This document shows, piece by piece, positions 24,536 to 52,064 of a stretch of DNA of 63,859 nucleotides. This DNA comes from Malacoraja senta (Eukaryota): NCBI GenBank assembly GCA_038087875.1, contig JAXLNO010001653.1, forward strand, positions 142-64,000. The letters are read 5' to 3'. Position numbers and translations under genes: made by a program. The number at the start of each line of letters is the position of its first letter. The first letter of the stretch is position 1. A model generated the notes under the pieces. That model made no database searches and was not told where the DNA came from. It saw only the letters and a list, made by a program, of their open reading frames with translations.

Positions 24536-24611
24536 TAGTAAATGTTAAACTGCAACCAATCTGCCTCGTAACTGACTTGGATCATGAACAGTGCGAGCCC
24601 CCAACAGAGCA

Positions 24612-24925: not shown

Positions 24926-25173
24926 GACTCAATGATATCTCTAGGATTTGGTGCAGTGAATCCATAATGTTTAACTTTTTTTTTTACACTGAATTCACAA
25001 TTTTCAAATATCTGATCATCAGAAACATTTAACAACAGCACAAAGGCTAGTTGACAGTGGTGACTGTCGAAGCATTTGAAGTGTAGCTGCTGCCTTATCC
25101 TACTTGAGATCGATCATTTCTTCAAGCCCAATACCTTTACTAGCAACAGTTCATCACAATTTTTCCATCTTAC

Positions 25174-25281
25174 CTCTCCTCTTTTTTCTCCACCAAACAA
25201 TTACTGCCAAGACAATAGCCAGCAATATCAGCACACACACGGCAATAAGGCCTATGTGCCTGTCTTTCTTCCCATTTCCTT
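25174..25281 (-). CDS. MHC class I connecting peptide/transmembrane exon
   Basis: Acceptor ttctttatttttcag-like tract (cttatttttcag|AA), donor AGAG|gtaaga; 108 nt, phase 1/1, in frame with alpha3. (E)GNGKKDRHIGLIAVCVLILLAIVLAVIVWWRKKRR is a 21-residue hydrophobic helix followed by a basic stop-transfer cluster. Not present in the ORF track. Confidence 0.88.
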
Positions 25282-26979
25282 CTGAAAAATAAGAATGCAT
25301 AATTTTACATATCATTTGTTAAGCTGTGCAGCTAAATAGATTGGCACTGTCTGAAGACTTCAGGGTGAAGAAGGGTCTCGACCCGAAATGCCTCCTATTT
25401 CTTTTCTCAAGAGATGCTACCTGACCACTGAGTTACTCCAGCATTTTGTGTCTATCTTTGGCACTTTTCAACATATATAAATATGTTGTTTTGAATCATG
25501 GAGTTCTGCAACATGGCAAAGGGACAATATATGTTCTGTACAACTCTATGATCTATGGCACCATCACAGCCACAACTTAATTCAAGAAAGAAGGTGAATT
25601 GAAAGCAGAAAGCTTTAACCCTATATAAACTATCATCTGTTTTGGGGAAAATGTTGGATTCCTTTCAGTAATGGCAGAACATTTAAGTAATAACAAAACA
25701 ATAAAGTGCATTAACAGGAAAATTGTAGAAAGAAAGAGATGCAGATACTGATTTATACAAAAGCTTTAGTTTAGTTTATTGTCACGAGTACTGAGGTGCA
25801 GTGAAAAGCTTTTGTTTCATGCTAACCAGTCAGTGGAAATAATATACATGATAGACACAAAATGCTGGAGTAACTGAGCGGAATAGGCAACATCTCTGGC
25901 GAACATGGACTCAGTCAGAAGGATCGTGACCCGAAACATCACCTATTCCTTTTCTCCAGAAATGCTGCCTGACCAGCTGAGTTATTCCAGCAATTTGTGT
26001 CCATCTTCGGTGTATACCAGCATTTGCAATTTCTCCCTACACATGGACAGGTGACATTTCGTTTACGGACCCTTCTTCAAACTTTGTTTGAGAAATTGAT
26101 TAGAATTCTTTGAAAATGAAACAGGAACCCGTAGACAATGTATATTTGAGCAGCAGTAGTTTGCAGGTGTGCACAGCCTAAAATTTAAAAACAAAATGAT
26201 GGAAAAGCAGAATAGGTAACAAAATTGGAATGAGAAACAAAAGAAATACAATATATTGTAGAGATCCAAGCGTCGTGAACAAATCAATGTTTTTTTAAGA
26301 AATACAGTTTTGGCCCACTCGCGTTTAGTAAGGACTTGAGCAAAGTTCCCACCGTTGTAATCGGGCGCACCAGTTGACTGGCGATTAACTCATCACCAAC
26401 TCCCACCAAAACCCTGTCATGTGATAGTCCCTGCTCCCCTGACGAGGGTTCTAGCAATAAGTGGCCTGACCACCAGATGTCGCCAGAATATCTGGATTTT
26501 CATAAGTTATCTGATCAAGTGATGCAAAGGCAAATGGCTTATGACATTGGGGGTAATAATTAGCATGAATGGAAAAACAATTAAGAGCAAGCAGAGTCTT
26601 AAAGGAGTGTTTAAGTTGGGAAACTGCAACTGCAGGATGGGAATCAATGCAAGAAAGTGAACTACTTATCGTTAGTATTAAGAGCAGATGAAGGGACTGA
26701 TGGCGCTGTAGCCTAGATTGCTGATGATACATAGATAGGTTGAAAATTAAGTTCTGGAGTATGTCAACAGTCTTCAGAGTGAAACATCAGATTCCTTATT
26801 TGTGCATTGTTCGAGGGAATCTTCAAAAGTGAACATTTGTGTGGGTTAGTGCAGCATACCTGGAATCAAACTACTACGATCGCTGTTTGTCAGGCAGTTA
26901 TATTTTTTTGTTGCTGAAGCTGTAACTTGCGTCACAGAACTTACTTCATTAGGTTTAGTTTTATTAATGCCAGATGTTT

Positions 26980-27650
26980 CAAGATAGTGCAAAGGTTTGT
27001 TTTGTATGCTATCCAAACAAATTAGATAATACTATAGATAAATAAAAAACTAAAAAACAATAGATAGAGCAAAGAGGAGGATACAGAGTACAGAATATAG
27101 TTCTCAGCATTGTAACGCATCAGTTCCATAGACAATGTTCAATGTGCAATGAGGTTGAGGTGAATCGGGCATTAAACCTACATTATGGAAGGACCCTTCT
27201 GAAGCCTGATAAGAGATGGAAAGGGGGTGTTCCTGAGTCTGGCAGTGCATATTTTCAATTTTCTGTACCTATTGCCTGATGGGAGCAGGAAGGAGGAATG
27301 ACCGGGGTGGGATACGTCTCGGTTTCCAAGGCAACCATCAATAGTGGGAAGTCTGGCCTGTGTGATGATCTTTAACTCTTTGTATATTCTTGCAGTCTTG
27401 GGCAGTGCAGTTCCCAAATCAAGATGTGATGCAACCCAACAACATGCTGTCTCTAGCAGCATCTATAGATGTTTGCTGGAGTCACCAGAGACATGATGAA
27501 TATTCTCAGTCTCCTGAGGAAGTAGAGGTGTCGGTGTGCCCCCTTGGCTATGTGGCCAGTCCATGACCGAATATTGGATATATTCATGCCAAGGAACACA
27601 AAGCTCTCAATCATTTCCACTTTGGACCACTGATTCGCATTGGGGCATGT
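26980..27650 (-). mobile_element. Degenerate L2/Rex1-type LINE 3' fragment
   Basis: Reverse translation TARIYKELKIITQARLPTID...HPGHSSFLLPSGNRYRKLKICTARLRN resembles the copy at 59590-60300. Confidence 0.6.
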
Positions 27651-27977
27651 ACTCCCCCAGTGCCTTGCTGTTAATCACATCATGAGGAAAGATTCATTTA
27701 TTATTTAAGCATACCTTTCATGGATTTCAGTTCCACCACTGAGAATCTCAAATACTCCTTCCTTGTATATTAGTTATTTATTTATTTTTGATAAATGTTC
27801 TGTTGACAAAGTCTTCTGCTCATGTGGAGAGTGGGTGCTGATTATGTGATTGCTTAGAGCAACACCACTAAACAAAGAAAGTTTAAGCATCTTGGAATAT
27901 GGGATGTAGTCACAATGGTTAAAATGGATACAACAGAAGATAATGATTATCTATGAAAGAATATTTAACGTTCTTAC

Positions 27978-28244
27978 CCCAGATGATGGTCTTCCCACCG
28001 GGCAGGCTCCTGTGATCGACATGACAGGAATACTGTTTCCCATCATACGGATCATACTGAAGGACAGACTTTAGATGATATGTTCCATCGTTGTTGGGTA
28101 TGACCCCAGAAGATTTGGTCTCAGAGACATGTTGACCATTCTGCAACCAGCTGACATTGATGGCCGGTTGGTAAAATCCAAACACAGTGCAGTACAGGAC
28201 TGAATGATCATCAGGGCGGGCAGCGAGAGTGACCTCAGGGGAAA
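27978..28244 (-). CDS. MHC class I heavy chain, alpha3 (Ig C1-set) exon
   Basis: Acceptor tcttactgtcttgtag|TT, donor TGGG|gtaaga; 267 nt, phase 1/1. (V)SPEVTLAARPDDHSVLYCTVFGFYQPAINVSWLQNG...IPNNDGTYH...YSCHVDHRSLPGGKTIIW shows the C1-set Cys/Trp/Cys, PNxDGTY and YxCxVxH motifs. Confidence 0.95.
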
Positions 28245-33585: not shown

Positions 33586-33862
33586 AACACAGAGGCACAG
33601 TGATAGAGTGGCTGTCTTACAGCATTAGAGACCCGGGTTTGATCCTGACTAGAATGCTGTCTGGATGGAGTTTGTACGTTCTCTCTGTCACCCTGTGGGT
33701 TTTCTCTGGGGGCTCCGGTTTCCTCCCAAATACAAAAGACATGCAGGTTAATTGGCTTCTGTAAATTGTCCCTAGCGTGTAGGACAGAAATAGTGAATGG
33801 GCAATTGCTGGTCAGTGTGGACTCAGTGGCCCAAGGTTCCTGTTTCTCTAAACTAAACCAAA
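33586..33862 (+). mobile_element. tRNA-derived SINE (HE1/V-SINE-like)
   Basis: GGCACAGTGATAGAG...GACCCGGGTTTGATCC head and CTAAACTAAAC tail. Confidence 0.75.
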
Positions 33863-34179
33863 ACTAATCTCCACTGCCTGCATGTGATCCATATTCTTGT
33901 ATTCCCTGCATACCCACGAGCCTGTCCAAAACTTTCTTAAGCACCATTATCATTTCCTCCTCTACCACCACTCCTGGTAGCGCATTCTAGGTATCAAGCT
34001 CTCTCTGTGCAAAAAAACACTTGACCTGCACATCTCGTGTAAATTTTGCCCTTCGAAGCTTAACGCTGTGCTCTTTTGAGATGTGTGATAGACATGCAAT
34101 CCCATTAGGGGCTGTCAACTGTGGTCAAGAAAATCCATGGTTAACTAATATGAAAGACATCAATTGCATTTTCTCCCTG

Positions 34180-36150: not shown

Positions 36151-36463
36151 CTCAGTTGGCTTCCTCCATGTGCTCCAGTTTTGTCCCATATACCAAAGAC
36201 GTGCCAGTGAGTTAGTTGGACATTGCAAATTATCCGTCGTGGAGCTGAATGTAAGGAGAATCCGAGGGAGCTGAGTGCAAGTTGTGAGAGAGAGCAGTGG
36301 AATGGTTTGTCGACATTGCATAGAAAACTAGCATAGAATCAATGGGCCGAATGACCTTTCCCTCTGTCATGATTGGGTCAGAGATAATATGACTCATTGC
36401 CTCAGAGTGAAATATTACTCATTGCCTACCATCACAAAACAACATCCTTTGTTCTGAACTCAC

Positions 36464-36739
36464 CTTTTCTGGTCAGGTATGTCTTTCCAATTGCATAGTT
36501 TGTAAGCCATAGATCCACACAGTCATGTTCTAACAAGCTCTTGAAATAACGGTTCATTTTTTCATTCTTGTCCCATTTCTCTTTGAAGGGCTCAGCTATT
36601 GGATCATGCACCGTCCACTTTAGTTTGTCCTTATCAAAACTAAATGCATATCTTCCATCAAAAGCCAACTTCAATATCCCTACAGTGGGACTGTGATCGT
36701 CCACCTCACAACCAAACTGTCCTTGAACGTAGTGATAAT
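36464..36739 (-). CDS. MHC class I heavy chain, alpha2 exon
   Basis: Acceptor tttttatttcag|AT, donor AAAG|gtgagt; 276 nt, phase 1/1. (N)YHYVQGQFGCEVDD...AFDG...WT...KEKWD...EHDCVDLWLTNYAIGKTYLTRK has H93, Q96, G100-C101, D119-G120, W133, K146-W147 and C164. Confidence 0.95.
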
Positions 36740-36919
36740 CTGAAATAAAAATAAAAATCATTATTTGATTAATTGTTATGACTGGGTAATTTCTGAACAC
36801 CAGGGTACAAGTTATTTATATATGTCACAAGTAGCAAGGGTCACAGCATAGATCCCTGTGACAACTCTACTTGTCACTGAACTACAGCCTGAATATTTGG
36901 CCTTCCGTACAACTGTAGA

Positions 36920-37365
36920 GACCATATTATTGTATGGGTGTGATGCATGGACTCTCACTCCAGCACTGTCCTAGTCTCTTGATGGTACCTACACCCGAAT
37001 GCTCGGAAAAGTTTAAAATGTCAGATGGAGGGACCACATCACCAACGCCCAGCTCTATGGGGAGAATCCACCTCTGACCGAGAAGATCACGTTGAGAAGG
37101 ATGAGGCTCGCAGGTCACTGGCTCCGTTACCCAGAAATGCCAGCGAACAAGGTTGTGCTGTGGGAACCCACCCATGGAAGACTTGACCCAGGATGGCCAA
37201 TCAAGATGATGGTGAAGACGTTGATGGAAGACGCATGTGTAGAGATAAAAAAGGCCCTTGCCAGTTGCATGAAGGAGAGATGTGTGGTGCATCCGTCACC
37301 GTGCCCGTCGGAAACCAGCACGGCACTAATGTTTTCAATGATTATTATTATCATCCACTACACCC
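36920..37365 (+). mobile_element. RTE-clade LINE 3' fragment
   Basis: LLYGCDAWTLT...RWRDHITN..LY...RRMRLAGHWLR is the RTE C-terminal pattern; short (ATT)n tail. Confidence 0.75.
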
Positions 37366-37479
37366 CTCTGTCCTGAGGATTTATCCACATTTCTCTTCAA
37401 GTGATCCAACATCTCCTTCTTGCTTAACTTCAAAGTGTCCCTGCATGTTAGCATTCTCCACATTGATTCTCCATGTGTA

Positions 37480-38285
37480 AGAAAGAACTGCAGATGCTGC
37501 AGATGTTAAAATCGAAGAGAGACACAAAATGCTGGCGTAACTCAGCGGGTCAGGCAGTTTCCCTGGAGAGATGGAATGGGCATCGTTTTGGGTCGAGACC
37601 CTTCTTCATACTGATGTCAGGGGAGGGACAAAGATAGAATGTCGGCGGAGACAGTAAGACTGGTGGGAGAATTGGGAAGGGGGAGGGGATGGAGAGAGAA
37701 ATCAAGGGCTATCGAAAGTTATAGAAGTCAATGTTCATACCGCTGGAGTATAGACTACCAAAGCGAAATATGAGGTGCTGTTCCTCCAATTTGGGCTGGG
37801 CCACACTCTGACAATGGAGGAGGCCCAGAACAGAAAGGTCAGATTGGGAATGGGAGGGGGAGTTGAAGTGCTGAGCCACCGGGAGATCGGGTAGGGTAAG
37901 ACGGACTGAGGGGAAGTGTTCAGCAAAACGATCGCAGAGCCTGCGCTTGGTCTCACTGATGTAGAGAAGTTGACAACTGAAACAGTGGATACAGTAGATG
38001 AGGTTGGAAGAGGTGCAAGTGAACTTCTGCCTCACCTGGAAAGACTTTTGGTCCTTGGACGGAGTCGAGGGGGGACGTAAAGGGACAGGTGTTGCATCTC
38101 CGGCGGTTGCAGGGGAAAGTAGCCGGGGAGCGGGTGGTTTGGGTGTGAAGGGACAAGTTGACCAGGGAGTTTCGGAGGGAACGGTCTCTGCGGAAAGCAG
38201 AAAGGGGTGGAGATGGGAAGATGTGATCAGTAGTGGGATCCCGTTGGAGGTGGCAAAAATGATGGAGGATTTTATGATGTACGTA
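37480..38285 (-). mobile_element. Penelope-like GIY-YIG fragment
   Basis: FQVRQKFTCTSSNLIYCIHC...LYISETKRRLCDRFAEH, followed by the terminal repeat. Confidence 0.85.
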
Positions 38286-39302
38286 CTATTAATAGTCCTT
38301 ACTATTCTCCACGTCTTCCTTGGTGAAACCAAACCTCGCCTATATCCACAAACTCCAAGCACATATTCCCTTCTATATCCTTAAGCAATCCACCTTTTGC
38401 TGCAATGGTTGCCTCGCCAACAGTATGTCTGTCCCTTCCTTCTTTGTGTCCATTTTGTATGTGTTAAATGTATATTCTTTCGTGTTCTTTTGCTTGTTTT
38501 GGGGGGGGGGGTTGGGGGAGTTGTGGGAAACTTTTCCTAATCTCTTACCTCGACGTTGATGCGATATTTTCTGTATCGTATCTCCGTCCACAATGCGGCC
38601 TAACATTGAGGAATGGCGGCCTTTGCTAGAGATCGACCGGGAGATCCATCGCAGGAGCCTGTGGACTTACCATCATGGAGCTCGCGATCCCTGTCGGGGA
38701 TCGACTTTAGGGCTCCAACTGTGAGAGCCTGCAAGACTTTAACATCGCGGAGCCCGCGGTCCCAGGTCGAGACCGACATCCGGGACCTCCAAGCCGCAGG
38801 AGTTTCGACCGCTCCGACCGCTCCGATGTGGGAGTTTCAATTCCCCAATGGGGGTTTCGACCACCGACTGCAGATTGTTTGACTGCCCCGACCGCAGGAG
38901 ATAAAGAGGAAGGAGATTAGACTTTATTGCCTTCTATCACAGTGAGGAATGTGCGGGCTCCTCTGTTGTGGATGTTTATGTTAACTTTTATGTTATTGTG
39001 TGTCTTGTTGCTTTTTTTAGTATGGTGTATGGTAGTCTGCATTTCAATGTACCTTAATTGGTATATGTGACAATAAACTAACCATGAAACCTTGAAAAAG
39101 ATGTGGGATTTTCTGTAATCCGACTCACTAAAGCCACTTTGTGGCCTTTATTAGCCCCTTTAATTTTAAGCTTTAGAGCAGTTGTTCTTAATCTTTTTGG
39201 CCCCACGACCCCATCGGGCATTCTTGATCAGTACCATGACCTCTGAAACAAAATTTGAAAAAAAACAGCCCGATTTATTAAAACATGTCTGCCATTGCTC
39301 AG

Positions 39303-40998
39303 TCAATGGGATGGCTGAAATTGCTTCGCAGTCATCAGGCAATCAAAACGAGCACGAATGCTCGACAGGCAGCATCGCATGTCAGTGTCGATCACAAGCC
39401 TATTGCGTACCTTCGTTTTCAGAGTTACCATAGTGGAGAATCCACCCTCACAGTGAGAGGTTGAGGGGGAATGGACCAATAGGGTCAGGGCCCTCTTCGA
39501 AAGAGCAGGACAGTCCTTCACTTTCAGCCAAAACGTGGCGAGCTCTTGTTCCATGAAGTCACTCTTGAGCTGCGCATCTTCACAAATTCGGTAAAATTCA
39601 ACCTTCGTAGTCACGTCAGTATCACTGATGGCACCGCCTTCAACGGAAAAGGGTCGGAAGATCCACTGATCACGAGAGCGGTCGTCCAGTCTGGGGAAGT
39701 AACATTCGATGGCTTCACTAATTGCCAGAAGGTGGGTTGAGATCTCCTCATGGAAGTGGCATTCAGCATCAGGCGTAGCATGGAGGAGCGTCGTCATCTC
39801 AGGGAAGATAGTCGAGTCACCGTCCTGGACTCTTCTCTGGTAAAGGTTCCTCCTGAATGCTGCCACTTTGCCATTGGGAGGTTTCCTTGAAGTGACAGGT
39901 TCAAGGAATTCACCTCAGCGAAGAAGTCAGCCAAGTAAGCAACCTTCATCACGAACAGTTCAACCTGCATCTTTTCATGAAGCTGATTCTCCTTCTCAGT
40001 ACCCCTTCTCTCCAAGAACAGCGCTATTTCCTCTCAACGTTGAATCACATGATTGAGAAATTTACCAGTGCGAAAGCCAGCGCACCTCTGTGTGGAATAA
40101 CAGAATAGTGAAATCGGCGCCCATTTCTTCACACATCGCTTTGAAGATTCTTGAGTTTGTTGCACTCTCTCGGATGTGGTTCACAATCTTCACCACATCT
40201 GAAAGCACTTCTCGAAGACCAAGAGGGAGAGTCTTCATCACTAAAGCATGGTGATGTATCATGCAGTGGGTGAAGGAGACATGGGGAGCGACATCCTTCA
40301 CGAAGGCTTGGAAACCGGATCTGCAGCTGACCATGGAAGGTGCCCCAACTGTACACATCCCGACAAGGCATTCCCACCAAGCTCATGTTTGATGAGGAAG
40401 GCTTCCAGCATTCTGAACACATCTTCTCCCCGAGTGGTAGTAGCCAATGGGTCCGAGAACAGGTACTCCTCCGCATGGCTTCTCCATTGAGGTAATGAAC
40501 GTAGACTAGCAGTTGGGAACATGAGGCAACATCTGTTGACTCTCCCAGTTGCAGTGAATACACTGGACTGCTCGTCACAGCCCTCACTACTTGCAGCAGA
40601 ATATCATTACTCATATCCGAGATTCAACTTTTGACTGTGTCATTCAAAAGGGAAATCTGCCTAAACTTGTTTGACTGCTCTTCCCCCAGCACCAACTTCG
40701 CTGTTTCGAGAAGGCGTGGCTTGATAAGCTCTTCACCGATGCTGTGAGGTTTCTTAGTCTGTGCGATTCGATAAGCAATCCGGTATGAAGCCTCCAACGC
40801 TGCTTCATTTTGATGAGCACAGTTACCCATTGAATAGATGCGGGATCCCTTGAGTACGGCTTCTTTTCGTTTGAAATAGTCCCCGCTCTTCCCCGCCAGG
40901 TTACTGTGACAAGACTCCAAATGGATCTTCAGTTTGCTGGGCTTCATGCTCTCGTGACTCAAAACCTTGGCACAGAGAACACATCGCGGCTTGACCAC
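39303..40998 (-). pseudogene. hAT transposase (BED zinc finger, CxxH, dimerization domain), multiply frameshifted
   Basis: KPRCVLCAKVLSHESMKPSKLKIHLESCH, LGESTD, CTVGAP, HCMIHHHAL, HTEVRWLS and CEGGFS...RNRL are spread over several frames. Confidence 0.9.
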
Positions 40999-42360
40999 GG
41001 ATTTTGAACAATGCTTGTGAAGCCCAACTTGAGAAATGTTTTACTATACGTGCGCGTCTTGGAAGACATGGTTCACAACACACACTGGGCCTGAGAGGAA
41101 TTTTATCAGTGGGTACAAAGTTTATTTTGGGCCTCATTCCCTTCTCCATTAGTCATCCTGTTTTTATCCACTATGCTACAGTTTTATGCCATGAGCTGGA
41201 GACTGCACGGCAAAAAGGGGTATGGAAGATGAGAGAGGGGTGGGATGGGGCGCTCTGTTGATTTTCTGCATTTGAGGCCTTATGTCCCTATACACCCTCC
41301 ATGATAAATATAAATAAGTATAAATAAAATAAAAGGATCAGAAAGCTCATTTGTTTTCCTTCACTCTATTGATGCTGCCTCACCCGTTGAGTTTCTCCAG
41401 CATTTAATCTAGCTTTGTTTTGAACATCTTTGTTTATGCTACAATACAGATAAGGAGAAAGAATTCACATTGAAACATCTTTTTATGTTTCAATGCAGTT
41501 CATATCATCAAAAGACATAATTATTTGTAAAAAGTAAAAGATTTATTATATAAATTTATTTTATATAAAGAGGTTTCCTGGCCTTTTTTTGTGAAAAATG
41601 TCAAATCACAGCATAAAAATGTATTGTTCTGGCAATGTATGATTCAATACTATTGATTCAATACGTTGACACCGTGGAGCTGTGGTCTGCGGAGCTTCTA
41701 ACCGCGGGCGTGGCGTGGACTTACCATCCGGATCCTGGGATCCCTCGCCGGGGATCACCAGAGACGAGCTCGAACCGCTGGCTCACATCCTGAAGCTGCG
41801 GTCTCCAGCAGGAAAGTGCCGAGTCGGGACCTCCAAGCCGCAGAGTGTGTTTGTCCGTCCCAACGTCGGAGTTTGGATCATCCCGACGAGAGGGCCTTGT
41901 ACATCGGGCCGTCCCTGGATGCGATTACGGAGGGGTTATGGCTCCGAACACGGGTGAACAAAGGAGGAAGACTGGCTGAAACTTGTTGCCTTCTACCACA
42001 GTGAAAAATGCTGTAGTGGATGTTTGTGTTCAATTTTATTGTGTATTGTGTGTTCTTTTTACGTGTATCACTGCTGGCAAATTCACTTCACTGCACCTTC
42101 GGGTGTATGTGATGAATAAAACTGACTTTAACTTTGAATACTTAGCCTGGCCAAATCCACAAGACGTTCATGAGACATTGTCGACCTTAATCAGCTTGAG
42201 TTTGCTAAATGACCTCTCTGCAGAAGCTACTGTTGCTGGAATTGTTAATAGTATTCTGAAGCTAACACAAACATTTGGAAACAGGTTACCAAGTCAATAG
42301 TCTGTTAACAAGTTCAACAGATCTAATGGTTTTAACTTCATTTATAAAATTCACCCTCCC

Positions 42361-42505
42361 ACTAACACACACATACACTCAGACACACACTCACTCACCT
42401 ACTCACATACACCCACACACATACACACACCCTCACCCACGCACTCAGCCACACACATACACACACCCTCACCCACTCACTCACACACACCCATCCACAC
42501 ACTGA
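42361..42505. repeat. Imperfect (CA)n microsatellite
   Basis: Directly visible CA-rich tract. Other simple repeats lie at ~9283-9330 (CA/TA) and ~29891-29909 (CT). Confidence 0.85.
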
Positions 42506-42791
42506 CCCAAACCCAGGCCCGGACCACTGAAACAGACGCGGCTGCCGACTCTCACCACCTCCCCGGGCGAGGCCACCGCAGCCACTGTCGCTGACCTTCA
42601 CTGTCTTCAGAAAGCCAATGATGCTGCTGCCCATATCTCTACTCCAGCTCCCCACGGGCCTCCACCAGCGACTCTGCCGACCCTCGCCTCTCCACCGGCC
42701 ACCAGCGGGCCAGACCCGTCACCTCACCAGAGTTCCCAGCATAGCACCAGGCCCACAACCTAAACCATGCAGTCAGCACATGGTCTGATTG

Positions 42792-42973
42792 CTGGCTCCT
42801 AGTGCTCCCCCCCCTCCCTCCTACAGGGAAGACCCATCAATAGTGATGACTCTGCTGGGTCCTAGTGCTCTCCCCCCTCCTTCTCCTACAGGGAAGATCC
42901 ATCAGTAGTGATGACTCTGTTGGGTCCTAGTGCTCTCCCTCCTCCTACAGGGAAGACCCATGAGTAGTGATGG
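42792..42973 (+). repeat. ~63-bp tandem repeat, 3 copies
   Basis: Units start at 42792, 42855 and 42920: CTGGGTCCTAGTGCTCTCCCCCCTCC..CTCCTACAGGGAAGAYCCATCARTAGTGATGACTCTG. Confidence 0.85.
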
Positions 42974-43995
42974 TTCTTCCCCTTCCCCCTCTTTTAATCA
43001 GGTTACCCCGACCACACACCCGCCAGTTAAAATTCCCTGCTATATTATGGATCACAATTTCTACGAATTACGATATATAAAACTCTGAAGGCACAAAATG
43101 TGAATGCTAGTCTTCACAAAATATATGCAAACATTTTCTGAGATTTCACGAAATTCCCACCCCCCCTCCTTCAGCTCCCGGGCTCCTATTGGACTCTGGG
43201 CCCGGGTACGATGTACCCCCTGCACCCCCCTCTCATAGGCCCTGTGTATACGTACGCGCATTCGTGAACAAAATACTGTGTGTGGTATGTACCTTTGTTA
43301 GGTTCCTCAAAATAGGCTCAACAAATTGATGTTCTTTACAACCCCTTCATGACCCCCGGAAAACCCCCAAGTGACCCCCATGGGGGTCATGACCCCCAGG
43401 TTAAGAACCACTGCTTTGGAGATACATTGCTGAAACAGGCCCTTCAGCCCATACTAGGGACAATTTACAATTATACCAAGCCAATTTACCTACATCTCAG
43501 AGAAAAGCCACACAGGTTACGGGGAGAACATGCAAACTCCGTACAGTCACCACTCGTAGTCAGGTTCAAACCCGGGTCTCAGGTGCTGCAAGGCAGCAAC
43601 TCGTGTAAGGCCACGATCTCTTGGCTTTGCTTATAGTTATTATCATGTTTTATCTTCTATTGTGTTCTTTTTGCTTATTGCATATAAACAAATGTAAAGC
43701 TGCACATAAGGTTGGATCTTTTCGAGGCCCGAGCTGCCCCATCTTTTACCACAAAAGTGCTTCCTATATTTAGAGAAACATAGATATAATAAGGCTCACC
43801 CCTCATGGGCATTGAAGGCTTTCTCTAAAATATGGAGACCATTAAGCTGTTCACTGCCAAGTTTATTTTTCACTATTGGCCATGATCCTTAGTGTACTCG
43901 GCGGTGGCATTGAACAGGTTAAAGATATCCAGTGATTGAACAGGTTAAAGATATCCAGTGATGTGTAGCTGCGCTACCCTTCCTTGGTATTTTTA

Positions 43996-44677
43996 AGGGC
44001 CTGTCCCACTTACCTGTCCTTGGCACACAAATTATGCGACCTCATGGTCGCGTTGAGGCTCACGGGCATCGTATGGCCGCGCGGGACCGGTCTCACTGAG
44101 AAGCGCGGAGGGGTATGTAGTTGTGCGCGACATCGTGCGGGGCTCCAATAATTTTGTAGTGAACGAAATCTTCGCGCGCCAACGGCCTGTCGCGGAACTG
44201 ACGGCCAAAGTGGGACAGGCCCAAGACCCTGGCGCGACGCAAAGTCTCACTTTCAACAGGAGCAGAAGCAGGCAAACGATCGCTGAACTCGGCCTGGGGC
44301 TCACGGCCGTTGCGGTCCGGATCCGCCCCCACTTCTACTCCCAGAGCGGGGCCAAGAAAATTGAAGATAGACACGAAATGCAGGAGTAACTCAGCAGGAC
44401 CGGCAGCATCTCTGGAGAGAAGCAATGGGTGATGTTTCGGGTCAAGACCCTTCTTTTCAGACTGAAGAAGAGTCTCGACATGAAACGTCATCTATTCCTT
44501 CTCTCCAGAGATGCTGCCGATCCCGCTGAGTTACTCCAGCTTTGTGTCCATCTTCAAATGACGTCACGCGCTCCAGACGGCTGTACGTACGCATGTAATC
44601 GCGCCCGACCTTCGCCGGACCATCGTGGCTCAACGCATAATATGCGTGCCAAGGACACGTAAGTGGGACAGGCCCCT
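43996..44677. mobile_element. PIF/Harbinger-like MITE
   Basis: TIR AGGGCCTGTCCCACTTACCTGTCCTTGGCAC.. versus ..GTGCCAAGGACACGTAAGTGGGACAGGCCCCT; TTA on both flanks (43993-95, 44678-80). Confidence 0.8.
44361..44557. repeat. Palindromic (MER6-like) element nested in the Harbinger MITE
   Basis: TTGAAGAT...ATCTTCAA with arms inverted around CTTCAGACTGAAG. Arm sequence equals the Penelope terminus; many partial copies across the window. Confidence 0.8.
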
Positions 44678-45324
44678 TTACTTAGATGATTCATTCCCTC
44701 TGGCATTGATTGATGAATCAAAGTGGGGGGGGGGGGGTGATGGAATTTGTAAGGATTTGCTGAAGTCAGTTTGCTTAAAACTGCTCACTCCTTGAAAAGG
44801 AGAGTCTGTGAACTTTAGCCCAGACAAAGAACAGTTTGTGAACTCAAGGTTATAACTGATAAAAACCTAGGCACAACTGTGAACAACAACCCTTTATTAG
44901 GATGAAGGTAATGAGCTAATGCCAACCATTCCCCTGGGACCAGGAGTAACAAGGAAGGGTCAAAACTTGGATGATGTTTTCATTCCAATAAGAAACTCTA
45001 CAAACAATGATAGCTGAATAAAACATACTTATGTTGTATAGATGAAGAGCCTCCTTTTCAAGCTGCTTTCTGCAGTCTTTTAGTTGTTCTGCAGATCCTT
45101 TACATTCTCTCGTTTTCGTGTTTTCAAGAAACACCACAATTAGCCGAATGTATACTAATTATAGAAACATAGAAAAATAGGCACAGGAATAGGCCATTCG
45201 GCCATTTGAGCCAGCACCGCCATTCAATATGATCATGTCTGCATCTAGAATCAGTAACCCATTCCTGCTTTTAGAAACATAGAAACACAGAATATAGTTG
45301 CAGGAGAAGGCCATTCGGCCCTTC

Positions 45325-46510
45325 ATAGATACATAGAAAATAGGTGCAGGAGTAGGCCATTCGGCCCTTCGAGCCTGCACCGCCATTCAATACGATCATG
45401 GCTGATCATCCAACTCAGTATCCCGTACCTGCCTTCTCTCCATACCCCCTGATCCCTTTAGCCACAAGGGCCACATCTAATTCCCTCTTAAATATAGCCA
45501 ATGAACTGGCCTCAACTACCCTCTGTGGCAGAGAGTTCCAGAGATTCACCACTCTCTGTGTGAAAAAGTTTTTCCTCATCTCGGTCTTAAAGGATTTCCC
45601 CCTTATCCTTAAGCTGTGACCCCTTGTCCTGGACTTCCCCAACATCGGGAACAATCTTCCTGCATCTAGCCTGTCCAACCCCATAAGAATTTTGTACGTT
45701 TCTATAAGATCCCCTCTCAATCTCCTAAATTCTAGCGAGTATAAGCCAAGTCTATCCAGTCTTTCTTCATATGAAAGTCCTGACATCCCAGGAATCAGTC
45801 TGGTGAACCTTCTCTGCACTCCCTCTATGGCTATAATGTCCTTCCTCAGATTTGGAGACCAAAACTGTACGCAATACTCCAGGTGTGGTCTCACCAAGAC
45901 CCTGTACAACTGCAGTAGAACCTCCCTGCTCCTATACTCAAATCCTCTTGCTATGAAGGCCAACATACCATTCGCTTTCTTCACTGCCTGCTGCACCTGC
46001 ATGCCTACTTTCAATGACTGGTGTACCATGACACCCAGGTCTCGCTGCATCTCCCCATTTCCTAATCGGCCACCATTTAGATAATAGTCTGCCTTCCCGT
46101 TTTTGCTACCAAAGTGGATAACCTCACATTTATCCACATTATACTGCATCTGCCAAACATTTGCCCACTCACCCAGCCTATCCAAGTCACCTTGCAGTCT
46201 CCTAGCATCCTCCTCACAGCTAACACTGCCCCCCAGCTTAGTGTCATCCGCAAACTTGGAGATGTTGCCTTCAATTCCCTCATCCAGTTCATTAATATAA
46301 ATTGTAAATAGCTGGGGTCCCAGCACTGAGCCTTGCGGTACCCCACTAGTCACTGCCTGCCATTGTGAAAAGGACCCGTTTACTCCTACTCTTTGCTTCC
46401 TGTTTGCCAGCCAGTTCTCTATCCACATCAATACTGAACCCCCAATACCGTGTGATTTAAGTTTGTATCCTAATCTCTTATGTGGTACCTTGTCGAAAGC
46501 CTTCTGAAAG
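45325..46510 (-). mobile_element. Young CR1 LINE 3' portion with open RT C-terminal frame
   Basis: ORF 46554-45415: DFQKAFDKVPHKRL, QGSVLGP, FADD through to the C-terminus without stops; complete 3' tail. Confidence 0.95.
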
Positions 46511-48280
46511 TCTTCGAGCCTGCACCGCCATTCAATATGATCATGGCTGATCATCCAACTCAGTATCCTGTACCTGCCTTCTCTCCATAACCCCTGATCC
46601 CTTTAGCCACAAGGGCCACATCTAACTCCCTCTTAAGTATAGCCAATGAACGGGCCTCAACTACATTCCGTGGCAGAGAATTCCAGAGATTCACCACTCT
46701 CTGTTTAAAAAATGTTTTTCTCATCTCAGTCCTAAAAGATTTCCCCTTTATCCTTAAACTGTGACCCCTTGTTCTGGACTTCCCCAAAATCGGGAACAAT
46801 GTTCCTGCATCTAGTCTGTCCAACCCCTTAAGAATTTTGTAAGTTTCTATAAGATCCCCCCTCAATCTTCTAAATTCTAGCGAGTACAAGCCGAGTCTAT
46901 CCAGTCTTTCTTCATATGAAAGTCCTGACATCCCAGGAATCAGTCTGGTGAACCTTCTCTGTACTCCCTCTATGGCAAGAATGTCCTTCCTCAGCTTAGG
47001 AGACCAAAACAGTAGGCAATACTCCAGGTGTGGTCTCACCAAGACCCTGAACAACTGCAGTAGAACCTCCCTGCTCCTCAAATCCTTTTGCTATGAATGC
47101 TAACATACCATTCGCTTTCTTCACTGCCTGCTGCACCTGCATGCCTACTTTCAATGACTGGTGTACCATGACACCCAGGTCTCGTTGCATCTCCCGTTTT
47201 CCTAATCGGCCACCATTCAGGTAATAGTCTACTTTCCTGTTCTTGCCACCAAAGTGGATAACCACACATTTATCCACATTATACTGCATCTGCCATGCAT
47301 TTGCCCACTCACCCAGGCTATCCAAGTCACCTTGCAGCCTCCTAGTACCCTCCTCACAGCTAACACTGCCCCCCAGCTTCGTGTCATCCGCAAACTTGGA
47401 GATGTTGCATTCAATTCCCTCGTCCAAATCATTAATATATATTGTAAATAGCTGGGGTCCCAGCACTGAGCCTTGCGGTACCCCACTAGTCACTGCCTGC
47501 CATTCTGAACCCGTTTACTCCTACTCTTTGCTTCCTGTCTGCCAGCCAGTTCTCTATCCACATCAATACTGAACCCCCAATACCGTGTGCTTTAAGTTTG
47601 TATACTAATCTCTTATGTGGGACCTTGTCGAAAGCCTTCTGAAAGTCCAGATATAACACATCCACTGGTTCTCCCTTATCCACTCTACTAGTTACATCCT
47701 CGAAATTTTTTATAAGATTCGTCAGACATGATTTACCTTTCATAAATCCATGCTGACTTTGTCCAATGATTTCACCATTTTCCTAATGTGCTGCTATCCC
47801 ATCTTTAATAACTGACTCTAGCAGTTTCCCCACTACCGATGTTAGACTAACTGGTCTGTAATTCCCCGTTTTCTCTCTCCCTCCCTTTTTAAAAAGTGGG
47901 GTTACATTAGGTACCCTCCAATCCTCAGGAACTACTCCAGAATCTAAAGAGTTTTGAAAAATTATCACTAATGCATCCACTATTTCTGGGGCTACTTCCT
48001 TAAGTACTCTGGGATGCAGCCTATCTGGCCCTGGGGATTTATCGGCCTTTAATCCATTCAATTTACCTAACACCACTTCCCGGCTAACTTGGATTTCACT
48101 CAGTTCCTCCATCTCATTTGAGCCCCGGTCCCCTGCTATTTTCGGCAGTTAATTAAGTCTTCCTTAGTGAAGACAGAACCAAAGTAGTTATTCAATTGGT
48201 CTGCCATGTCCTTGTTCCCCATGATCAATTCACCTGTTTCTGACTGCAAGGGACCTACATTTGTTTTAACTAATCTTTTC
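46511..48280 (-). mobile_element. Second tandem CR1 copy with small deletions
   Basis: ORFs 47783-48112, 47486-47743, 46996-47493 and 46560-47081 tile the same RT region in shifting frames. Confidence 0.92.
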
Positions 48281-49175
48281 CCCCATATCCCTTGATTCCT
48301 TTAGCCTTAAGAGCTAAATCTAACTCTCTCTTGAAAGTACGTTGTTTAGATAAGAGCCTTCTTTTCAAGCTTCTTTCTGCGGTCTTTTAGTTGTGTTTTG
48401 CAGGTGCTTTAGTTTGTCTCGTCTTCTCTCTGCTGAATATGTAACAACTACAAGCTGTGAATAACAAAAAATCCTTGAAAACTAACACTGGACTGCGAGT
48501 GTGAGTACAAAGCATGTTCTAATGTGACCCAACTTCAGTCTGAAGTAGGATCCTCACGCGAAATATCTGCCTTCCCATGTTCTCCAAAGATGCCACTTGA
48601 CCCGTTGAGTTCCTTAGCACTTTGTGTGTGGAGGAAAGCAGCCTCTGCTCTTCCTTTCATCTACAATTGTTAAATAGTTCAATCCAGACAATTACTTCAA
48701 TTTTACACTGTTGACTAAAATGAGAAAGAAGGCAGTTCAAGGATAAATAACTGCCCATCAATCCATGTGACAGAGAAAGAGGCCTTTCAGCCTCCTGAGC
48801 CCACTCTAGCCCAGAGAACAAAACCATTCCACCACTAATTTTCCCCAAAACGGATCTTCCTCATTTCTATCAATGCCACAAATCCACCTATTTGCAGCGG
48901 TGGCTTAATCTACTAAATCAGCACATTTTGGTATGTGGGAGGAAACTGGAGAACAAACATTGTCACAGGGAGAATGCTTATACTCCACACAGACTGCACT
49001 GGAGATGATTGAACACGGATCACTGGAGCTGTGAGGCATCAGCGCTCTTTGCTATAAGCAGTCATAGAGAGTCACACAGCAGGGAAACAAGCCCTTTGGC
49101 CCAACGTATCCAAGCTAATCAAGATACCCCATTTAAGCTAGTCCCATTTACCCTGCAATGGGTAGACATCATTCA

Positions 49176-49660
49176 AAACGTTTCTCTCTAGATGTCAGCT
49201 GCTCTACATCGGTGAGACCAAGCGCAGGCTTGGCGATCGTTTCGCCGAACGCCTCCGCTCGGTTCGCAACAACCAACCTGATCTCCCGGTGGATCAGGAC
49301 TTCAACTCCCCCCTCCCATTCCAAATCCGACCTTTCTGCCCTCGGCCACCTCCATGGCCAGAGTGAGGACCACCGTAAATTGGAGGAGCAGCACCTCATA
49401 TTTCGCTTGGGCAGTTTGCACCCCAACGGTATGAACATTGACTTCTTTAATTTCAGGTAGTCCTTACTTTCTCCTCCCCTACTCAGCTCTCCCTCAGCCC
49501 ACTGGCTCCACATATTCCTTTCTTCTTCCTGCGCCCCACCCCCCCCCTCCCACCCACCCTCACATCAGTCTGAAGAAGGGTTTTCGGCCCGAAACGTTGC
49601 CTATTTCCTTCGCTCCATAGATGCTGCCTCACCCGCTGAGTTTCTCCAGCACTTTTATCT
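49176..49660 (+). mobile_element. Penelope-like GIY-YIG 3' fragment
   Basis: CQLLYIGETKRRLGDRFAE...RKLEEQHLIFRLGSLHPNGMNIDF plus the terminal repeat. Confidence 0.85.
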
Positions 49661-51803
49661 ACCTATGCATGTCCCTGTCCATGTGTCTTTTAAATATTGT
49701 TATTGTACCTGCCGCAACTCCATTCTCTGGCAGGTCATTCCATATGCTGACCACTCTCTGAGCACAAAGATCGCCCCCAAGTTCCAATTAAATCTTCCCC
49801 CTCTCACATTAAACCCATGTCCTCTGGTTATTTTATTCCCCTTCTCTGGGTAAAAGGCTCTGGGCATACAGTCTATCAATTCCCCTCATGATTTTAAGCA
49901 CCACTATATGATCACCCCTCAGCCTCCTGTGCTCCATGGAATAAAGCCCTGGCTTGCCCAATCTCTCCCTCTTGTTCACACCCTTGAGCCCTGACAATAT
50001 GCTCATAAATCTCATAAACATAACAATGTTGCAGATAATATGTGCACCATAAATAATGCAAATTAAAAAAATATTTTTGAAGGCAATATGATTCAATAAA
50101 CATGGTTCAATGAATCAGATGATAATGTAATAAACGTCATTCACATGTATTCACATATAATTTGAAAATAATAATAAATATTGCAAGATGAGGAAAATTG
50201 ATAGAAATTATGCCCAGTGCATAATATTTTGACGTATTGTTCCCTGTTTGTACCCTCACCCTGTTTTAGTCCAGTTAAAGATTAATAATATAATGTGTTT
50301 AATGTGTAACCGAAGAGGTAACAAAAAGCAATGTTTTCAGAAATAATTAATCATGAATGAATGACACTTTATAGTGACATGTGACAAGTCACAGTGAAAT
50401 TCTTTGTTTTGTAAACCCAACGTATGTCAAGATTCTTCACATAAAGGGCACCGACAAAGTTATAAAGTCTCCCACACCAGGTCCTCCTTTGTCCCCCACC
50501 CACCCCCCACCTCACAATGGTTCCCCCACGCCTAGTCCTGCTTTGTTCAATGGTACACTACGAATGTCATTGAATTAACACAGTAATGGTGATAGGACTT
50601 ATTGATTTACAATATAAAACGTGTCCAATTGCAATTTATATGGATATACAAGTGTGGTGCAGACGGATTTGGGCAGCTTACTTTACAATTGGTGCCCAAG
50701 ATAATTTAGAGATATAGCACGAAAACAGCCCTTAGAGTCCACAGTGACTAGTGATCCCCTTTGGCATACAGGCTTGGAGTGTGGGAGGAAACCGGAGCAT
50801 CCGGGGAAAACCCACGCAGGTCACGGGGAGTACGTACAAACTCTGTACAGACAGCACCTGAGGCCAGGATCAACCCTGGGTCTCTGGCACTACAGCAGTA
50901 TCACTACGGCTGAACCACAATGCCATTTAGGTTATCCTTTAAATATTTCACACTACTTTTCTTTCAACATTTGTCAATAAAAGTCAAAACAATTGGTGAG
51001 GTACGCAAGGGATTTTAACCATTCAAAAAGCCGCCATCATTTCAATTATTTGTAAAATGCTGGAACACACAGCAGGTTCAACAGAACCTATGGAAAGAGA
51101 AACAAAATTAATGCTTCAGAATTGTGAGAATGTGTAAGTTACAGACAGGAGTGGGAGGCATGGTTGGACATAGGGAGTATCACTGATAAGGTAATGACAG
51201 GTTTCCATGGTGATAAACTGACAATGAAGCCATCAGACAATGGCATTTTTGGTTTTTATTTCACATTTGCAGCATCTGCAGTTCTTAGGTTAGTGACTCA
51301 GCATGGAAACGGGCCATTCGGCCCACCAATTCCATGCCAACCATCGATCATCTTTCACACTAATTCTATGTTATCCCAAAATGGACACAAAATGCTGGAG
51401 TAAGTCAGGGGGAACACTCTGTCTGAGGAAGGGTCTTGACCTGAAAAGTCATCCATTCCTTGTATCCAGAGATGCTGCCTGTCCCGCTGAGTTACTCCAG
51501 CACATTGTGCCTATCTTTGCTGTAAACCAGCATCTTCAGTTCCTTCCTACACATCTATGTAATCCCACTTTCTCACCCATTCTCAGCACACAAGAGTAAT
51601 TTGCAGAGCCCAATTAACCTACAAACTCTCACGTTTTCAAGATATGGGACGAAACCGGAGCACCTGGAGGAAATATCTGTGGTCACAGGGAGAACGTGTA
51701 GTCAGGATCAAACCTGGGTTTCTGGCACAGCGAGAAATTTCTTTGAGATGTTTTTTTATGAACATTGATCACACTCCAAATGTATAGAAATGAATGAACT
51801 AAC

Positions 51804-52064
51804 TTGCTGTTTCATTCTGCCTCCGCGTCCATTCATCGACTTGCCCTTTGATGATTCCATGGAAACCAGTTTCAGAGACCGTATTTGTTACCCAGTAATT
51901 CCTGTCAAATGCAGCCGCCATCCATTTCTGTCTTGGAACTGTAATGACCATGTTTTTGTCATAATACTGTATCTCACAACCGTCCAGAACACCCACGACA
52001 CTATATTCCGGTAGATGAGTACTCCCGTGGTTCAGGGTGTAGTAATAGATCAGTGTGTGAGGCC
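51804..52064 (-). CDS. MHC class I heavy chain, alpha1 exon (non-classical-like)
   Basis: Acceptor tgtgtctag|GG, donor GCAA|gttagt; 261 nt, phase 1/1. (G)PHTLIYYYTLNHGSTHLPEYSVVGVLDGCEIQYYDKNMVITVPRQKWMAAAFDRNYWVTNTVSETGFHGIIKGQVDEWTRRQNETA aligns to class I alpha1 (HxLxYxxT, VG-x-x-D, YW at 59-60, R84, N86-E-T sequon). Confidence 0.93.

What the first reader, a model, noticed from the sequence alone, without database searches (positions are those of the whole stretch)
25174..52064. Intact, spliceable non-classical MHC class I gene hidden in 27 kb of transposon-filled introns
Seen: four exons with canonical GT-AG sites, all phase 1, form one stop-free alpha1-alpha2-alpha3-TM frame with both disulfides and the N86 sequon. 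Known: cartilaginous fish have classical UAA plus several non-classical lineages (UBA, UCA, UDA, UEA among those described). Inference: the residue pattern excludes classical UAA and probably UDA, which is reported to keep nearly all anchor residues. It could be a divergent member of a known lineage or an undescribed one; I cannot assign it by eye.
Basis: partly seen in the sequence, partly recalled or inferred. Interest (0 to 1): 0.8.

Follow-up and report, generated by a model that had tools for sequence, protein, structure and literature searches.

The report
Skate UGA class I-like gene
The four exons are real and belong to a skate copy of UGA, a shark-and-ray MHC class I-like gene lineage that is already named, already crystallised and described as CD1-like, so this is an ordinary orthologue and not a new lineage.

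Summary
On the minus strand, four phase-1 exons with AG/GT borders (alpha1 51804-52064, alpha2 36464-36739, alpha3 27978-28244, TM 25174-25281) read without a stop. I add a fifth coding exon, 12.5 kb further downstream (12675-12715), which encodes the tail DYQNIQPKQNVHC and the stop. The leader exon is not in the window.

The lineage is not new. All three domains match PDB 9CH4, "shark nonclassical MHC class I, UGA", at E 1e-33 to 1e-37. The next-best chains score about 1e-9, 1e-12 and 1e-27. The spliced protein is 92% identical to a RefSeq protein of Amblyraja radiata. The window is collinear with that 78-kb locus. In a tree it nests inside skates, then batoids, then a 17-member UGA clade.

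On the window's own branch the coding sequence changed four times more slowly than flanking introns, so this copy has been under constraint. It does carry private radical replacements: Pro to Gln in the invariant FYP motif, Y171N and M80T.

RNA-like contigs of a related organism end exactly at the predicted exon borders. Expression of this exact copy is untested.

Earlier notes of this scan report several other UGA copies on other pieces of this genome. Interest is low.

The parts
51804..52064 (-). Alpha1 exon (phase 1). Y7, Y59 and R84 are kept, and the NET sequon lies at position 86.
   Evidence: Sequence and splice sites. PDB 9CH4_A E 2.2e-37. 95% nucleotide identity to the Amblyraja exon.
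36464..36739 (-). Alpha2 exon (phase 1), with the C101-C164-type cysteine pair. K146 and W147 are kept. T143 is F, Y159 is L and Y171 is N.
   Evidence: Pfam MHC_I E 1.9e-12. 9CH4_A E 1.4e-33 and alignment to 7CPO.
27978..28244 (-). Alpha3 exon (phase 1), an Ig C1-set domain. It carries the private changes FYP to FYQ and HSS to HRS.
   Evidence: C1-set E 5.8e-19. 9CH4_A E 6.6e-34. Contigs of run X3 end at 27978 and at 28246.
25174..25281 (-). Connecting-peptide and transmembrane exon (phase 1), ending in the basic stop-transfer stretch WWRKKRR.
   Evidence: 97.7% nucleotide identity to Amblyraja. An X3 contig leaves the stretch exactly at 25174.
12675..12715 (-). It encodes the cytoplasmic tail DYQNIQPKQNVHC plus TAA and carries a Tyr-x-x-Ile sorting-type motif.
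   Evidence: tblastn with P0154 and P0156. Acceptor and stop read. The same exon is present in three other skate loci.
12617..12622 (-). AATAAA 53 nt after the stop. It is a candidate polyadenylation signal only.
   Evidence: Read. Not tested. One X3 contig carries about 465 nt beyond the tail coding part, which suggests a longer 3' UTR in that organism.
12716..25173 (-). Intron of 12.5 kb between the TM and tail exons. It holds LINE copies on both strands.
   Evidence: ORF 14528-16363 has Exo_endo_phos_2 plus RVT_1. Collinear blocks with the Amblyraja locus.
36740..51803 (-). Intron of 15 kb between alpha1 and alpha2. It holds reverse-transcriptase and other transposon remnants.
   Evidence: ORF 45415-46554 has RVT_1, E 2e-20. 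ORF list.

Best explanation
This is the skate orthologue of UGA. UGA is a non-classical MHC class I heavy-chain lineage of sharks and rays that specialists describe as CD1-like. The window holds five of its six coding exons. The leader exon lies an estimated 20 kb or more beyond the window's right end. Inferred mode of action, taken from the lineage and not tested on this copy: the heavy chain folds as alpha1/alpha2 groove plus a C1-set alpha3 domain, pairs with beta-2-microglobulin, and binds lipid-type ligands rather than peptides with anchored termini. It is routed through endosomes by the Tyr-x-x-Ile motif of its 18-residue tail (RKKRR-DYQNI...) and is displayed to T cells. This copy has been under purifying selection on its own lineage and is probably functional. 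It nevertheless carries a few private radical replacements whose effect is unknown.
For: Lineage. Each domain's best PDB match by far is 9CH4_A (E 2.2e-37, 1.4e-33, 6.6e-34). The next chains score about 2e-9, 6e-12 and 1e-26. The title of 9CH4 is 'Crystal structure of shark nonclassical MHC CLASS I, UGA'. The Stegostoma member of the same clade matches 9CH4 at E 6.7e-170.

Orthology. The spliced product is 92.1%, 90.2% and 89.6% identical to the Amblyraja, Rhinoraja and Leucoraja proteins. Exon lengths, phases and AG/GT sites are identical in four other skate loci, with no indels. The window is collinear with the Amblyraja locus through introns and flanks, at 82-91% identity. In the tree the window sits in a skate clade (SH-aLRT 100), a batoid clade (99) and a 17-row UGA clade (99), in species-tree order.

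Constraint. Pairwise dN/dS is 0.35-0.52. On the window's own branch 9 of 953 coding sites changed, against 132 of 3601 flanking intron sites (Fisher p 2.5e-6). There were 8 nonsynonymous changes where 27.5 were expected at the intron rate.

Splicing. In the RNA-like run X3 (another organism, 98-99% identical in alpha3), contigs stop exactly at 25174 and 27978 and within 2 nt at 28246. Unique intron bins have zero depth. Logan contigs of 1.4-3.5 kb encode full 334-aa products with the DYQNI tail.

Function. [quoted passage not shown] The Tyr-x-x-(I/V) tail is kept in 13 of the 15 full-tail UGA proteins aligned.
Against: The leader exon and promoter are not in the window, so intactness is unproven. 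No public run holds this exact sequence; the best share of words is 0.59, so transcription of this copy is untested. The copy has private replacements at conserved sites. P205Q falls in the FYP motif, where Pro is found in 16 of 16 aligned relatives and in 60 of 60 fetched alpha3 domains. Y168N (Y171 in HLA numbering) falls where 25 of 26 relatives have Tyr. M80T falls where all relatives have Met or Leu (one related non-UGA protein has Tyr). The three runs laid, all from other organisms, read Pro and Ser where the window has Gln205 and Arg258. The window's own branch shows 8 nonsynonymous changes to 1 synonymous. Earlier notes of this scan, unchecked here, report other UGA copies in this genome, some of them broken, so this could be one of several paralogues. 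Lipid binding is known to me only from a review that cites a personal communication, and nothing was measured on this protein.
Confidence: 0.8

Rival explanations
1. It is a UGA copy that has recently lost its function: a young pseudogene or a redundant paralogue that still looks intact in the exons visible here.
For: There are private radical replacements at an invariant Pro of the C1-set FYP motif, at the Y171 equivalent and at M80. The window's branch shows an 8:1 ratio of nonsynonymous to synonymous changes, against 25:31 on the other branches (Fisher p 0.07). The runs laid read the canonical Pro and Ser. The leader exon was not seen. Earlier scan notes describe frameshifted and splice-broken UGA copies elsewhere in this genome (not checked here).
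Against: There is no stop, no frameshift and no broken splice site in five exons. Coding sites changed four times more slowly than flanking introns on this very branch, and nonsynonymous changes are at about 0.3 of the intron rate. The 8:1 ratio therefore comes from a shortage of synonymous changes (1 against 7.2 expected) and not from an excess of replacements. The terminal branch in the protein tree (0.034) is no longer than those of Leucoraja (0.05) or Rhinoraja (0.051).
Confidence: 0.17
2. It represents an undescribed non-classical class I lineage of cartilaginous fish.
For: Pfam does not recognise the alpha1 exon on its own.
Against: The exons are 64-70% identical to the crystallised UGA across all domains. 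The product is 92% identical to a RefSeq skate protein. It nests inside a well-supported clade spanning sharks, rays and skates.
Confidence: 0.01
3. It is a diverging UGA paralogue that is acquiring a changed ligand or partner specificity. On this reading the private changes are adaptive rather than decay.
For: Nonsynonymous changes outnumber synonymous ones 8:1 on the window's branch. Two of them (M80T, Y171N) lie at alpha-helix positions that face the groove in class I molecules (the positional reading is by homology). Sawfish and sawshark carry three UGA-type proteins each.
Against: The counts are too small to show positive selection. P205Q lies in alpha3, far from the groove. The locus is collinear with the single Amblyraja locus, as expected of the orthologue.
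Confidence: 0.04

Closest known systems
Shark UGA (PDB 9CH4, 'shark nonclassical MHC class I, UGA', released 2026-03-18)
   Same: All three extracellular domains align end to end without gaps at E 1e-33 to 1e-37. The disulfides, the N86 sequon and the groove-helix lengths are the same. The two fall in the same clade in the tree, through the Stegostoma orthologue.
   Different: About 64-70% identity (shark against skate). The window has Gln for the FYP proline, and Asn where 9CH4 has the Y171-equivalent Tyr.
RefSeq skate proteins XP_032898133.1 (Amblyraja radiata), XP_055521885.1 (Leucoraja erinacea) and the Rhinoraja longicauda protein P0164. All carry the automatic name 'class I histocompatibility antigen, F10 alpha chain-like'.
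   Same: 90-92% protein identity, the same six-exon plan, the same phases and the same RKKRR/DYQNI tail. The Amblyraja locus is collinear.
   Different: A different species or copy: 4.3-6% coding divergence and 8 private amino-acid changes. Intron sizes differ. The alpha1-to-tail span is about 39 kb here, 46 kb in Amblyraja and 16 kb in Rhinoraja.
Neighbouring class I-like lineage of Leucoraja (XP_055486430.1, P0006). It is possibly UFA, but the letter is not verified.
   Same: It sits on the same 127-kb Leucoraja contig as a UGA copy. It is sister to the UGA clade in the tree (SH-aLRT 86). Its best PDB hit is also 9CH4 (E 2.9e-60).
   Different: Only 46% identical in alpha1 and 39% overall. 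It has a long tail without the Tyr-x-x-Ile motif.
Mammalian CD1 (CD1b in particular)
   Same: This is a resemblance in how it works. The review reports lipid-type ligands for UGA (PMC12562908). The short tail has YQNI after a basic stretch, as in the CD1b tail; the CD1b comparison is from my own knowledge and was not tested here.
   Different: There is no specific sequence kinship. No CD1 chain appears among the alpha1 hits at E up to 1 or among the best 60 alpha2 hits. Pfam MHC_I_3 scores 16 bits against a cut-off of 35. CD1 is not among the 50 best structural matches of the orthologue model.
Classical class I: shark UAA (PDB 6LUP) and chicken BF2
   Same: The same fold (Z 22-23 for the orthologue model). 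Y7, Y59, R84, K146 and W147 are kept.
   Different: T143 is F, Y159 is L and Y171 is N. Sequence matches are only E 1e-8 to 1e-9 per domain.
Chicken YF1*7.1 (lipid-presenting non-classical class I) and zinc-alpha-2-glycoprotein
   Same: They are the next best structural matches after 9CH4 (Z 23.2 and 22.8). Both bind lipid-type ligands according to their entry titles.
   Different: Their Z values are tied with classical class I within 1 unit, and sequence identity is 25-31%. This is no evidence of specific kinship.

Membership tests
UGA lineage of elasmobranch non-classical MHC class I | Best and full-length sequence match to the reference UGA heavy chain (9CH4_A) in alpha1, alpha2 and alpha3 | tested here: met
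   E 2.2e-37, 1.4e-33 and 6.6e-34. The next-best chains score 2e-9, 6e-12 and 1e-26. Entry title.
UGA lineage of elasmobranch non-classical MHC class I | Nests in one supported clade with shark, ray and skate UGA proteins | tested here: met
   Skate clade 100, batoid clade 99 and 17-row clade 99 (SH-aLRT, quick search). The clade is anchored to 9CH4 by Stegostoma P0172 (E 6.7e-170).
UGA lineage of elasmobranch non-classical MHC class I | Conserved gene plan: phase-1 exons for alpha1, alpha2, alpha3 and TM, plus a separate short tail exon | tested here: met
   The same exon lengths and AG/GT sites occur in Amblyraja, Rhinoraja and two Leucoraja loci. The tail exon is at 12675-12715.
UGA lineage of elasmobranch non-classical MHC class I | Tyr-x-x-hydrophobic motif in a short cytoplasmic tail | tested here: met
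   The window has DYQNI. Skates, rays and most sharks have YQNI, YENI, YNAV or YNVI.
UGA lineage of elasmobranch non-classical MHC class I | Linkage to the MHC class Ib cluster | not testable with these tools
   No other host gene lies in the 63.9-kb window. Linkage is stated in PMC12562908 and PMC10751288 for the lineage only.
UGA lineage of elasmobranch non-classical MHC class I | Binds lipid-type ligands and pairs with beta-2-microglobulin | not tested
   Known only from the review's statement. Nothing was measured on this protein.
Classical class I (UAA) | Full set of conserved residues that hold the peptide termini (Y7, Y59, R/Y84, T143, K146, W147, Y159, Y171) | tested here: not met
   Five are kept and three are changed (T143F, Y159L, Y171N), by alignment to 8JQT and 7CPO.
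CD1 family | Sequence membership (CD1-type alpha1/alpha2 domain) | tested here: not met
   Pfam MHC_I scores 47.6 bits in alpha2. MHC_I_3 scores 16.1 bits against a cut-off of 35. No CD1 chain is among the alpha1 hits or the top alpha2 hits.

The most novel reading that the evidence does not exclude
This skate may carry several UGA loci, whereas the literature calls UGA single- or low-copy. The window's copy, with private changes at two groove-facing helix positions (M80T, Y171N) and in the alpha3 FYP motif, might then be a paralogue diverging in ligand or partner binding rather than the plain orthologue.
Probability: 0.07. Interest if true: 0.4.

Novelty: new member of a known kind. Interest (0 to 1): 0.2.

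Why it matters
It matters little beyond annotation. The result adds one more skate orthologue to UGA, a lineage already named, already crystallised and already predicted by RefSeq in three other skates. Three points are useful. Second, the UGA exon plan and Tyr-x-x-Ile tail are kept across skates while introns vary several-fold in length through transposon load. Third, this copy replaces the invariant FYP proline and the Y171-equivalent tyrosine. That is worth checking against reads of the same animal before anyone uses this sequence as the species' UGA reference.

Tried and rejected
Leader exon. tblastn with two orthologues, fuzzy peptide matching in all six frames, and blastn with 1.1-kb leader neighbourhoods of four skate loci found only repeats. 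I conclude that the leader lies outside the window.

Tail exon by motif alone. A search for Y-x-x-hydrophobic followed by a stop gave only false candidates. The real exon continues past the motif and was found by homology.

Pseudogene reading from the 8:1 (7:0 by the strictest count) ratio of nonsynonymous to synonymous changes on the window's branch. I set it aside as the main reading after the comparison with flanking introns showed strong constraint.

My first impression that three private changes hit near-invariant columns. A recount left one invariant column (P205), one nearly always Tyr (168) and one always Met or Leu within the UGA clade (80). S258R lies at a position where other class I relatives have Lys.

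Expression of this exact copy. No run holds more than 0.59 of the sampled words. The only read-laying run therefore tested relatives and not this animal.

Literature. '9CH4' as a search term gave only chemistry hits. No primary paper on UGA or UFA is in the library. The supplements of PMC10751288 do not name UFA or UGA genes. The two J Immunol lineage papers are not held.

The search of earlier findings by sequence was blank.

No GPR139-like gene is in the window.


Full report
OBSERVATION

The gene lies on the minus strand.
- alpha1, 51804-52064 (261 nt)
- alpha2, 36464-36739 (276 nt)
- alpha3, 27978-28244 (267 nt)
- connecting peptide and transmembrane, 25174-25281 (108 nt)

Each exon follows a pyrimidine tract and AG, and each is followed by GT (GTTAGT, GTGAGT, GTAAGA, GTAAGA). 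Every length is a multiple of three and every exon starts with two bases that complete a codon, so all are in phase 1. The joined frame is open throughout. Pfam recognises MHC_I in the alpha2 exon (E 1.9e-12) and C1-set in the alpha3 exon (E 5.8e-19). The alpha1 exon alone finds no Pfam family. Both cysteine pairs and the NET sequon at position 86 are there.

The TM exon ends in ...WWRKKRR plus one base before its GT, so the coding sequence must continue. tblastn with skate orthologues finds the continuation at 12675-12715. The DNA there reads ...ttccctcctcag|AT TAT CAA AAT ATT ... TGC TAA. With the carried-over G this gives DYQNIQPKQNVHC and a stop. An AATAAA lies 53 nt after the stop. It is only a candidate signal.

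The leader exon is not in the window. Protein, fuzzy-peptide and DNA searches with four orthologous leader regions all failed. In Amblyraja the leader lies 31.8 kb upstream of alpha1. In Rhinoraja the distance is about 15 kb, and in the two Leucoraja loci about 18 and 22 kb. The window offers only 11.8 kb upstream. Its last collinear block (61653-62599) corresponds to a point still about 20 kb short of the Amblyraja leader.

The introns hold LINE reverse transcriptases and other transposon remnants.

WHAT IT IS

Each domain was searched against all PDB chains. One chain, 9CH4_A, stands far above everything else:
- alpha1: E 2.2e-37; next best 2e-9
- alpha2: E 1.4e-33; next best 6e-12
- alpha3: E 6.6e-34; next best 1e-26

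The entry title, obtained through a structural search with a model of the Amblyraja orthologue, is "Crystal structure of shark nonclassical MHC CLASS I, UGA", released 2026-03-18.

An exhaustive HMMER search with the alpha1 exon found only three representatives below 1e-30 among 1.8 billion proteins. They are RefSeq or UniRef proteins of Leucoraja erinacea and Pristiophorus japonicus, and the Leucoraja cluster also holds a protein of Amblyraja radiata. A word-based search with the Amblyraja protein added Rhinoraja, Pristis (three proteins), Mobula, Hemitrygon, Heptranchias, Heterodontus, Stegostoma, Scyliorhinus, Cetorhinus and Mustelus.

The window's spliced product is 92.1% identical to Amblyraja, 90.2% to Rhinoraja, 89.6% to Leucoraja, and 58-71% to rays and sharks. 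The Stegostoma member matches 9CH4 at E 6.7e-170, which ties the clade to the named molecule.

In a maximum-likelihood tree of 50 class I-type proteins, the window falls in a skate clade (SH-aLRT 100), inside a batoid clade (99), inside a 17-row UGA clade (99). The branching follows the species tree, and the window's end branch is of ordinary length. The tree was a quick search, and rows outside the UGA clade are unlabelled.

ORTHOLOGY AT THE DNA LEVEL

The Amblyraja gene spans 77.7 kb. The window aligns to it block after block in one order and orientation, from beyond the tail exon through every intron to upstream of alpha1. Identity is 82-91% outside exons and 94-98% in exons. The four other skate loci have the same exon lengths, phases and AG/GT sites, with no indels.

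IS THIS COPY ALIVE?

Pairwise dN/dS among skates is 0.30-0.61, and 0.35-0.52 for pairs that include the window.

On the window's own branch, polarised with Amblyraja and Rhinoraja, I count 1 synonymous and 8 nonsynonymous changes. Taken alone this looks like relaxed constraint. Against 25:31 on the other branches, Fisher p is 0.07.

The same three-way comparison on flanking intron sequence, keeping well-aligned stretches only, gives 132 window-specific changes in 3601 sites (3.7%). The coding sequence has 9 in 953 (0.94%). Fisher p is 2.5e-6. At the intron rate 27.5 nonsynonymous changes are expected and 8 are seen; 7.2 synonymous changes are expected and 1 is seen. The odd ratio therefore reflects a shortage of synonymous changes, and the copy has clearly been under purifying selection on its own lineage.

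What remains is the quality of some replacements:
- P205Q removes the proline of the FYP motif.
- Y168N (Y171 in HLA numbering) hits a residue that is Tyr in 25 of 26 relatives.
- M80T replaces a residue that is Met or Leu in all UGA proteins.

The other five changes (N101D, N106T, E242Q, S258R, N312K) fall at variable or tolerant positions.

TRANSCRIPTS

No public run holds this exact sequence (best share of words 0.59). The single read-laying run therefore used relatives.

In run X3 (guessed to be RNA, another organism), three contigs lie on the exons only:
- One covers 25252 down to 25174 and then goes on for 506 letters that are not the intron.
- One starts exactly at 27978.
- One reaches 28246. 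That is the alpha3 acceptor plus two bases that also fit the end of alpha2, and 28 further letters lie ahead of it.

Unique intron bins have zero depth in X3, while the DNA-like runs X1 and X4 cover all bins. This supports the predicted splice sites in a close relative.

All three runs that cover the two places read G at 28169 and G at 28009 (plus strand). That gives Pro205 and Ser258, so the window's Gln and Arg are private to it.

Independently, Logan contigs of 1.4-3.5 kb encode complete 334-residue Leucoraja-type products with the DYQNI tail.

HOW IT PROBABLY WORKS

Shown here:
- A class I heavy-chain architecture with a C1-set alpha3 domain, one TM helix and an 18-residue tail.
- Five of the eight classical terminus-binding residues are kept (Y7, Y59, R84, K146, W147). 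Three are changed (T143F, Y159L, Y171N).
- A Tyr-x-x-Ile/Val tail is conserved from sharks to skates.

Taken from the literature:
[quoted passage not shown] Their crystal structure and mass spectrometry suggest lipid ligands (PMC12562908, citing a personal communication).
- PMC10751288 mentions UFA as CD1-like, from unpublished data.

Inferred: pairing with beta-2-microglobulin, endosomal recycling through the tyrosine motif (the YQNI of CD1b is from my own knowledge), and display of lipid-type ligands to T cells.

By sequence the gene is not a CD1. No CD1 chain appears among the alpha1 hits or the top alpha2 hits. Pfam MHC_I_3 is far below its threshold. CD1 is not among the 50 best structural matches of the orthologue model, where chicken YF1*7.1, ZAG and classical class I are tied behind 9CH4.

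EARLIER NOTES OF THIS SCAN

Several follow-up notes on other pieces of the same genome already identified skate UGA copies with the YQNI tail. Some have a 2-base deletion or a broken splice site. I reached the UGA assignment independently, through the 9CH4 title and the tree. I could not read those other pieces, so I cannot tell whether they are paralogues or haplotigs. Another first-reader note on this window says the alpha1 anchors are kept and the alpha2 anchors are lost. My reading agrees for Y7, Y59 and R84 and for T143, Y159 and Y171. K146 and W147, however, are kept.

VERDICT

This is a real gene and the splice plan is correct. It is extended by one exon at the 3' end and lacks its leader in this window. 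It is a routine orthologue of the known UGA lineage, not a new lineage. It is probably functional, with a minority chance that this particular copy is beginning to decay. Interest is low.

Noticed in passing
window 1-4000: A G+C-rich stretch (0.52-0.56) with extreme strand asymmetry (GC skew about -0.6). Its long ORFs are runs of Ser/Pro/Leu repeats on one strand and Gly/Glu/Arg repeats on the other. It looks like a large low-complexity or satellite-type block downstream of the gene.
   Followed up: no
window 58264-59004 (+), 37709-38362 (-), 31457-31732 (-), 49158-49460 (+): Repeated ORFs share a GIY-YIG-type motif. Pfam GIY-YIG scores E 1.9e-4 for 58264-59004, just under its cut-off. They look like Penelope-like element remnants scattered through the introns and the upstream region. 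Another first-reader note reports hammerhead-like cores at their ends.
   Followed up: partly
window 16477-20969 (+) and 14528-16363 (-): Two different LINE-type elements lie in the TM-tail intron. One, on the plus strand, has a coiled ORF1-like ORF and a long ORF2-like ORF; ORF 17788-19140 gave no Pfam hit. The other, on the minus strand, has endonuclease plus RVT_1 (E 5.4e-34).
   Followed up: partly
window 39303-40998 (-): A chain of ORFs (124, 161/98 and 187 aa) resembles a domesticated or decayed DNA-transposon transposase by eye. The two ORFs tested gave no Pfam hit at E 0.001.
   Followed up: partly
L004 102732-103604 (Leucoraja contig JAMYXN010000161.1): RefSeq isoforms X1-X4 of LOC129716032 join UGA exons to a GPR139-like 7TM gene about 34 kb downstream. 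A second, 57%-identical GPR139-like copy lies at 88001-88864. This looks like a read-through annotation artefact. No such gene is in the window.
   Followed up: partly
Leucoraja contig JAMYXN010000384.1 (L003 covers part of it): A second class I-like gene (XP_055486430.1, P0006) shares the 127-kb contig with a UGA copy. It is 46% identical in alpha1, sister to the UGA clade, and 9CH4 is also its best PDB hit (E 2.9e-60). It is a candidate for the other CD1-like lineage (UFA), but the letter is unverified.
   Followed up: partly
window coding exons (own branch): Only 1 synonymous change was seen where about 7 are expected at the flanking-intron rate (Poisson P 0.006). Synonymous sites of these short exons seem constrained, or the filtered intron rate overestimates the neutral rate.
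   Followed up: partly
window about 51975-51977 (-), alpha1 residue 30: An extra cysteine in alpha1 (LDGCEI) has no obvious partner. It is kept in 14 of 16 aligned UGA-type proteins.
   Followed up: no
Amblyraja L001, Rhinoraja L002, Leucoraja L003/L004 against the window: Gene size varies several-fold among skates with an identical exon plan. From leader to stop the gene spans 77.7 kb in Amblyraja, about 64 kb in Leucoraja and 31 kb in Rhinoraja. In the window, alpha1 to stop alone spans 39 kb.
   Followed up: yes
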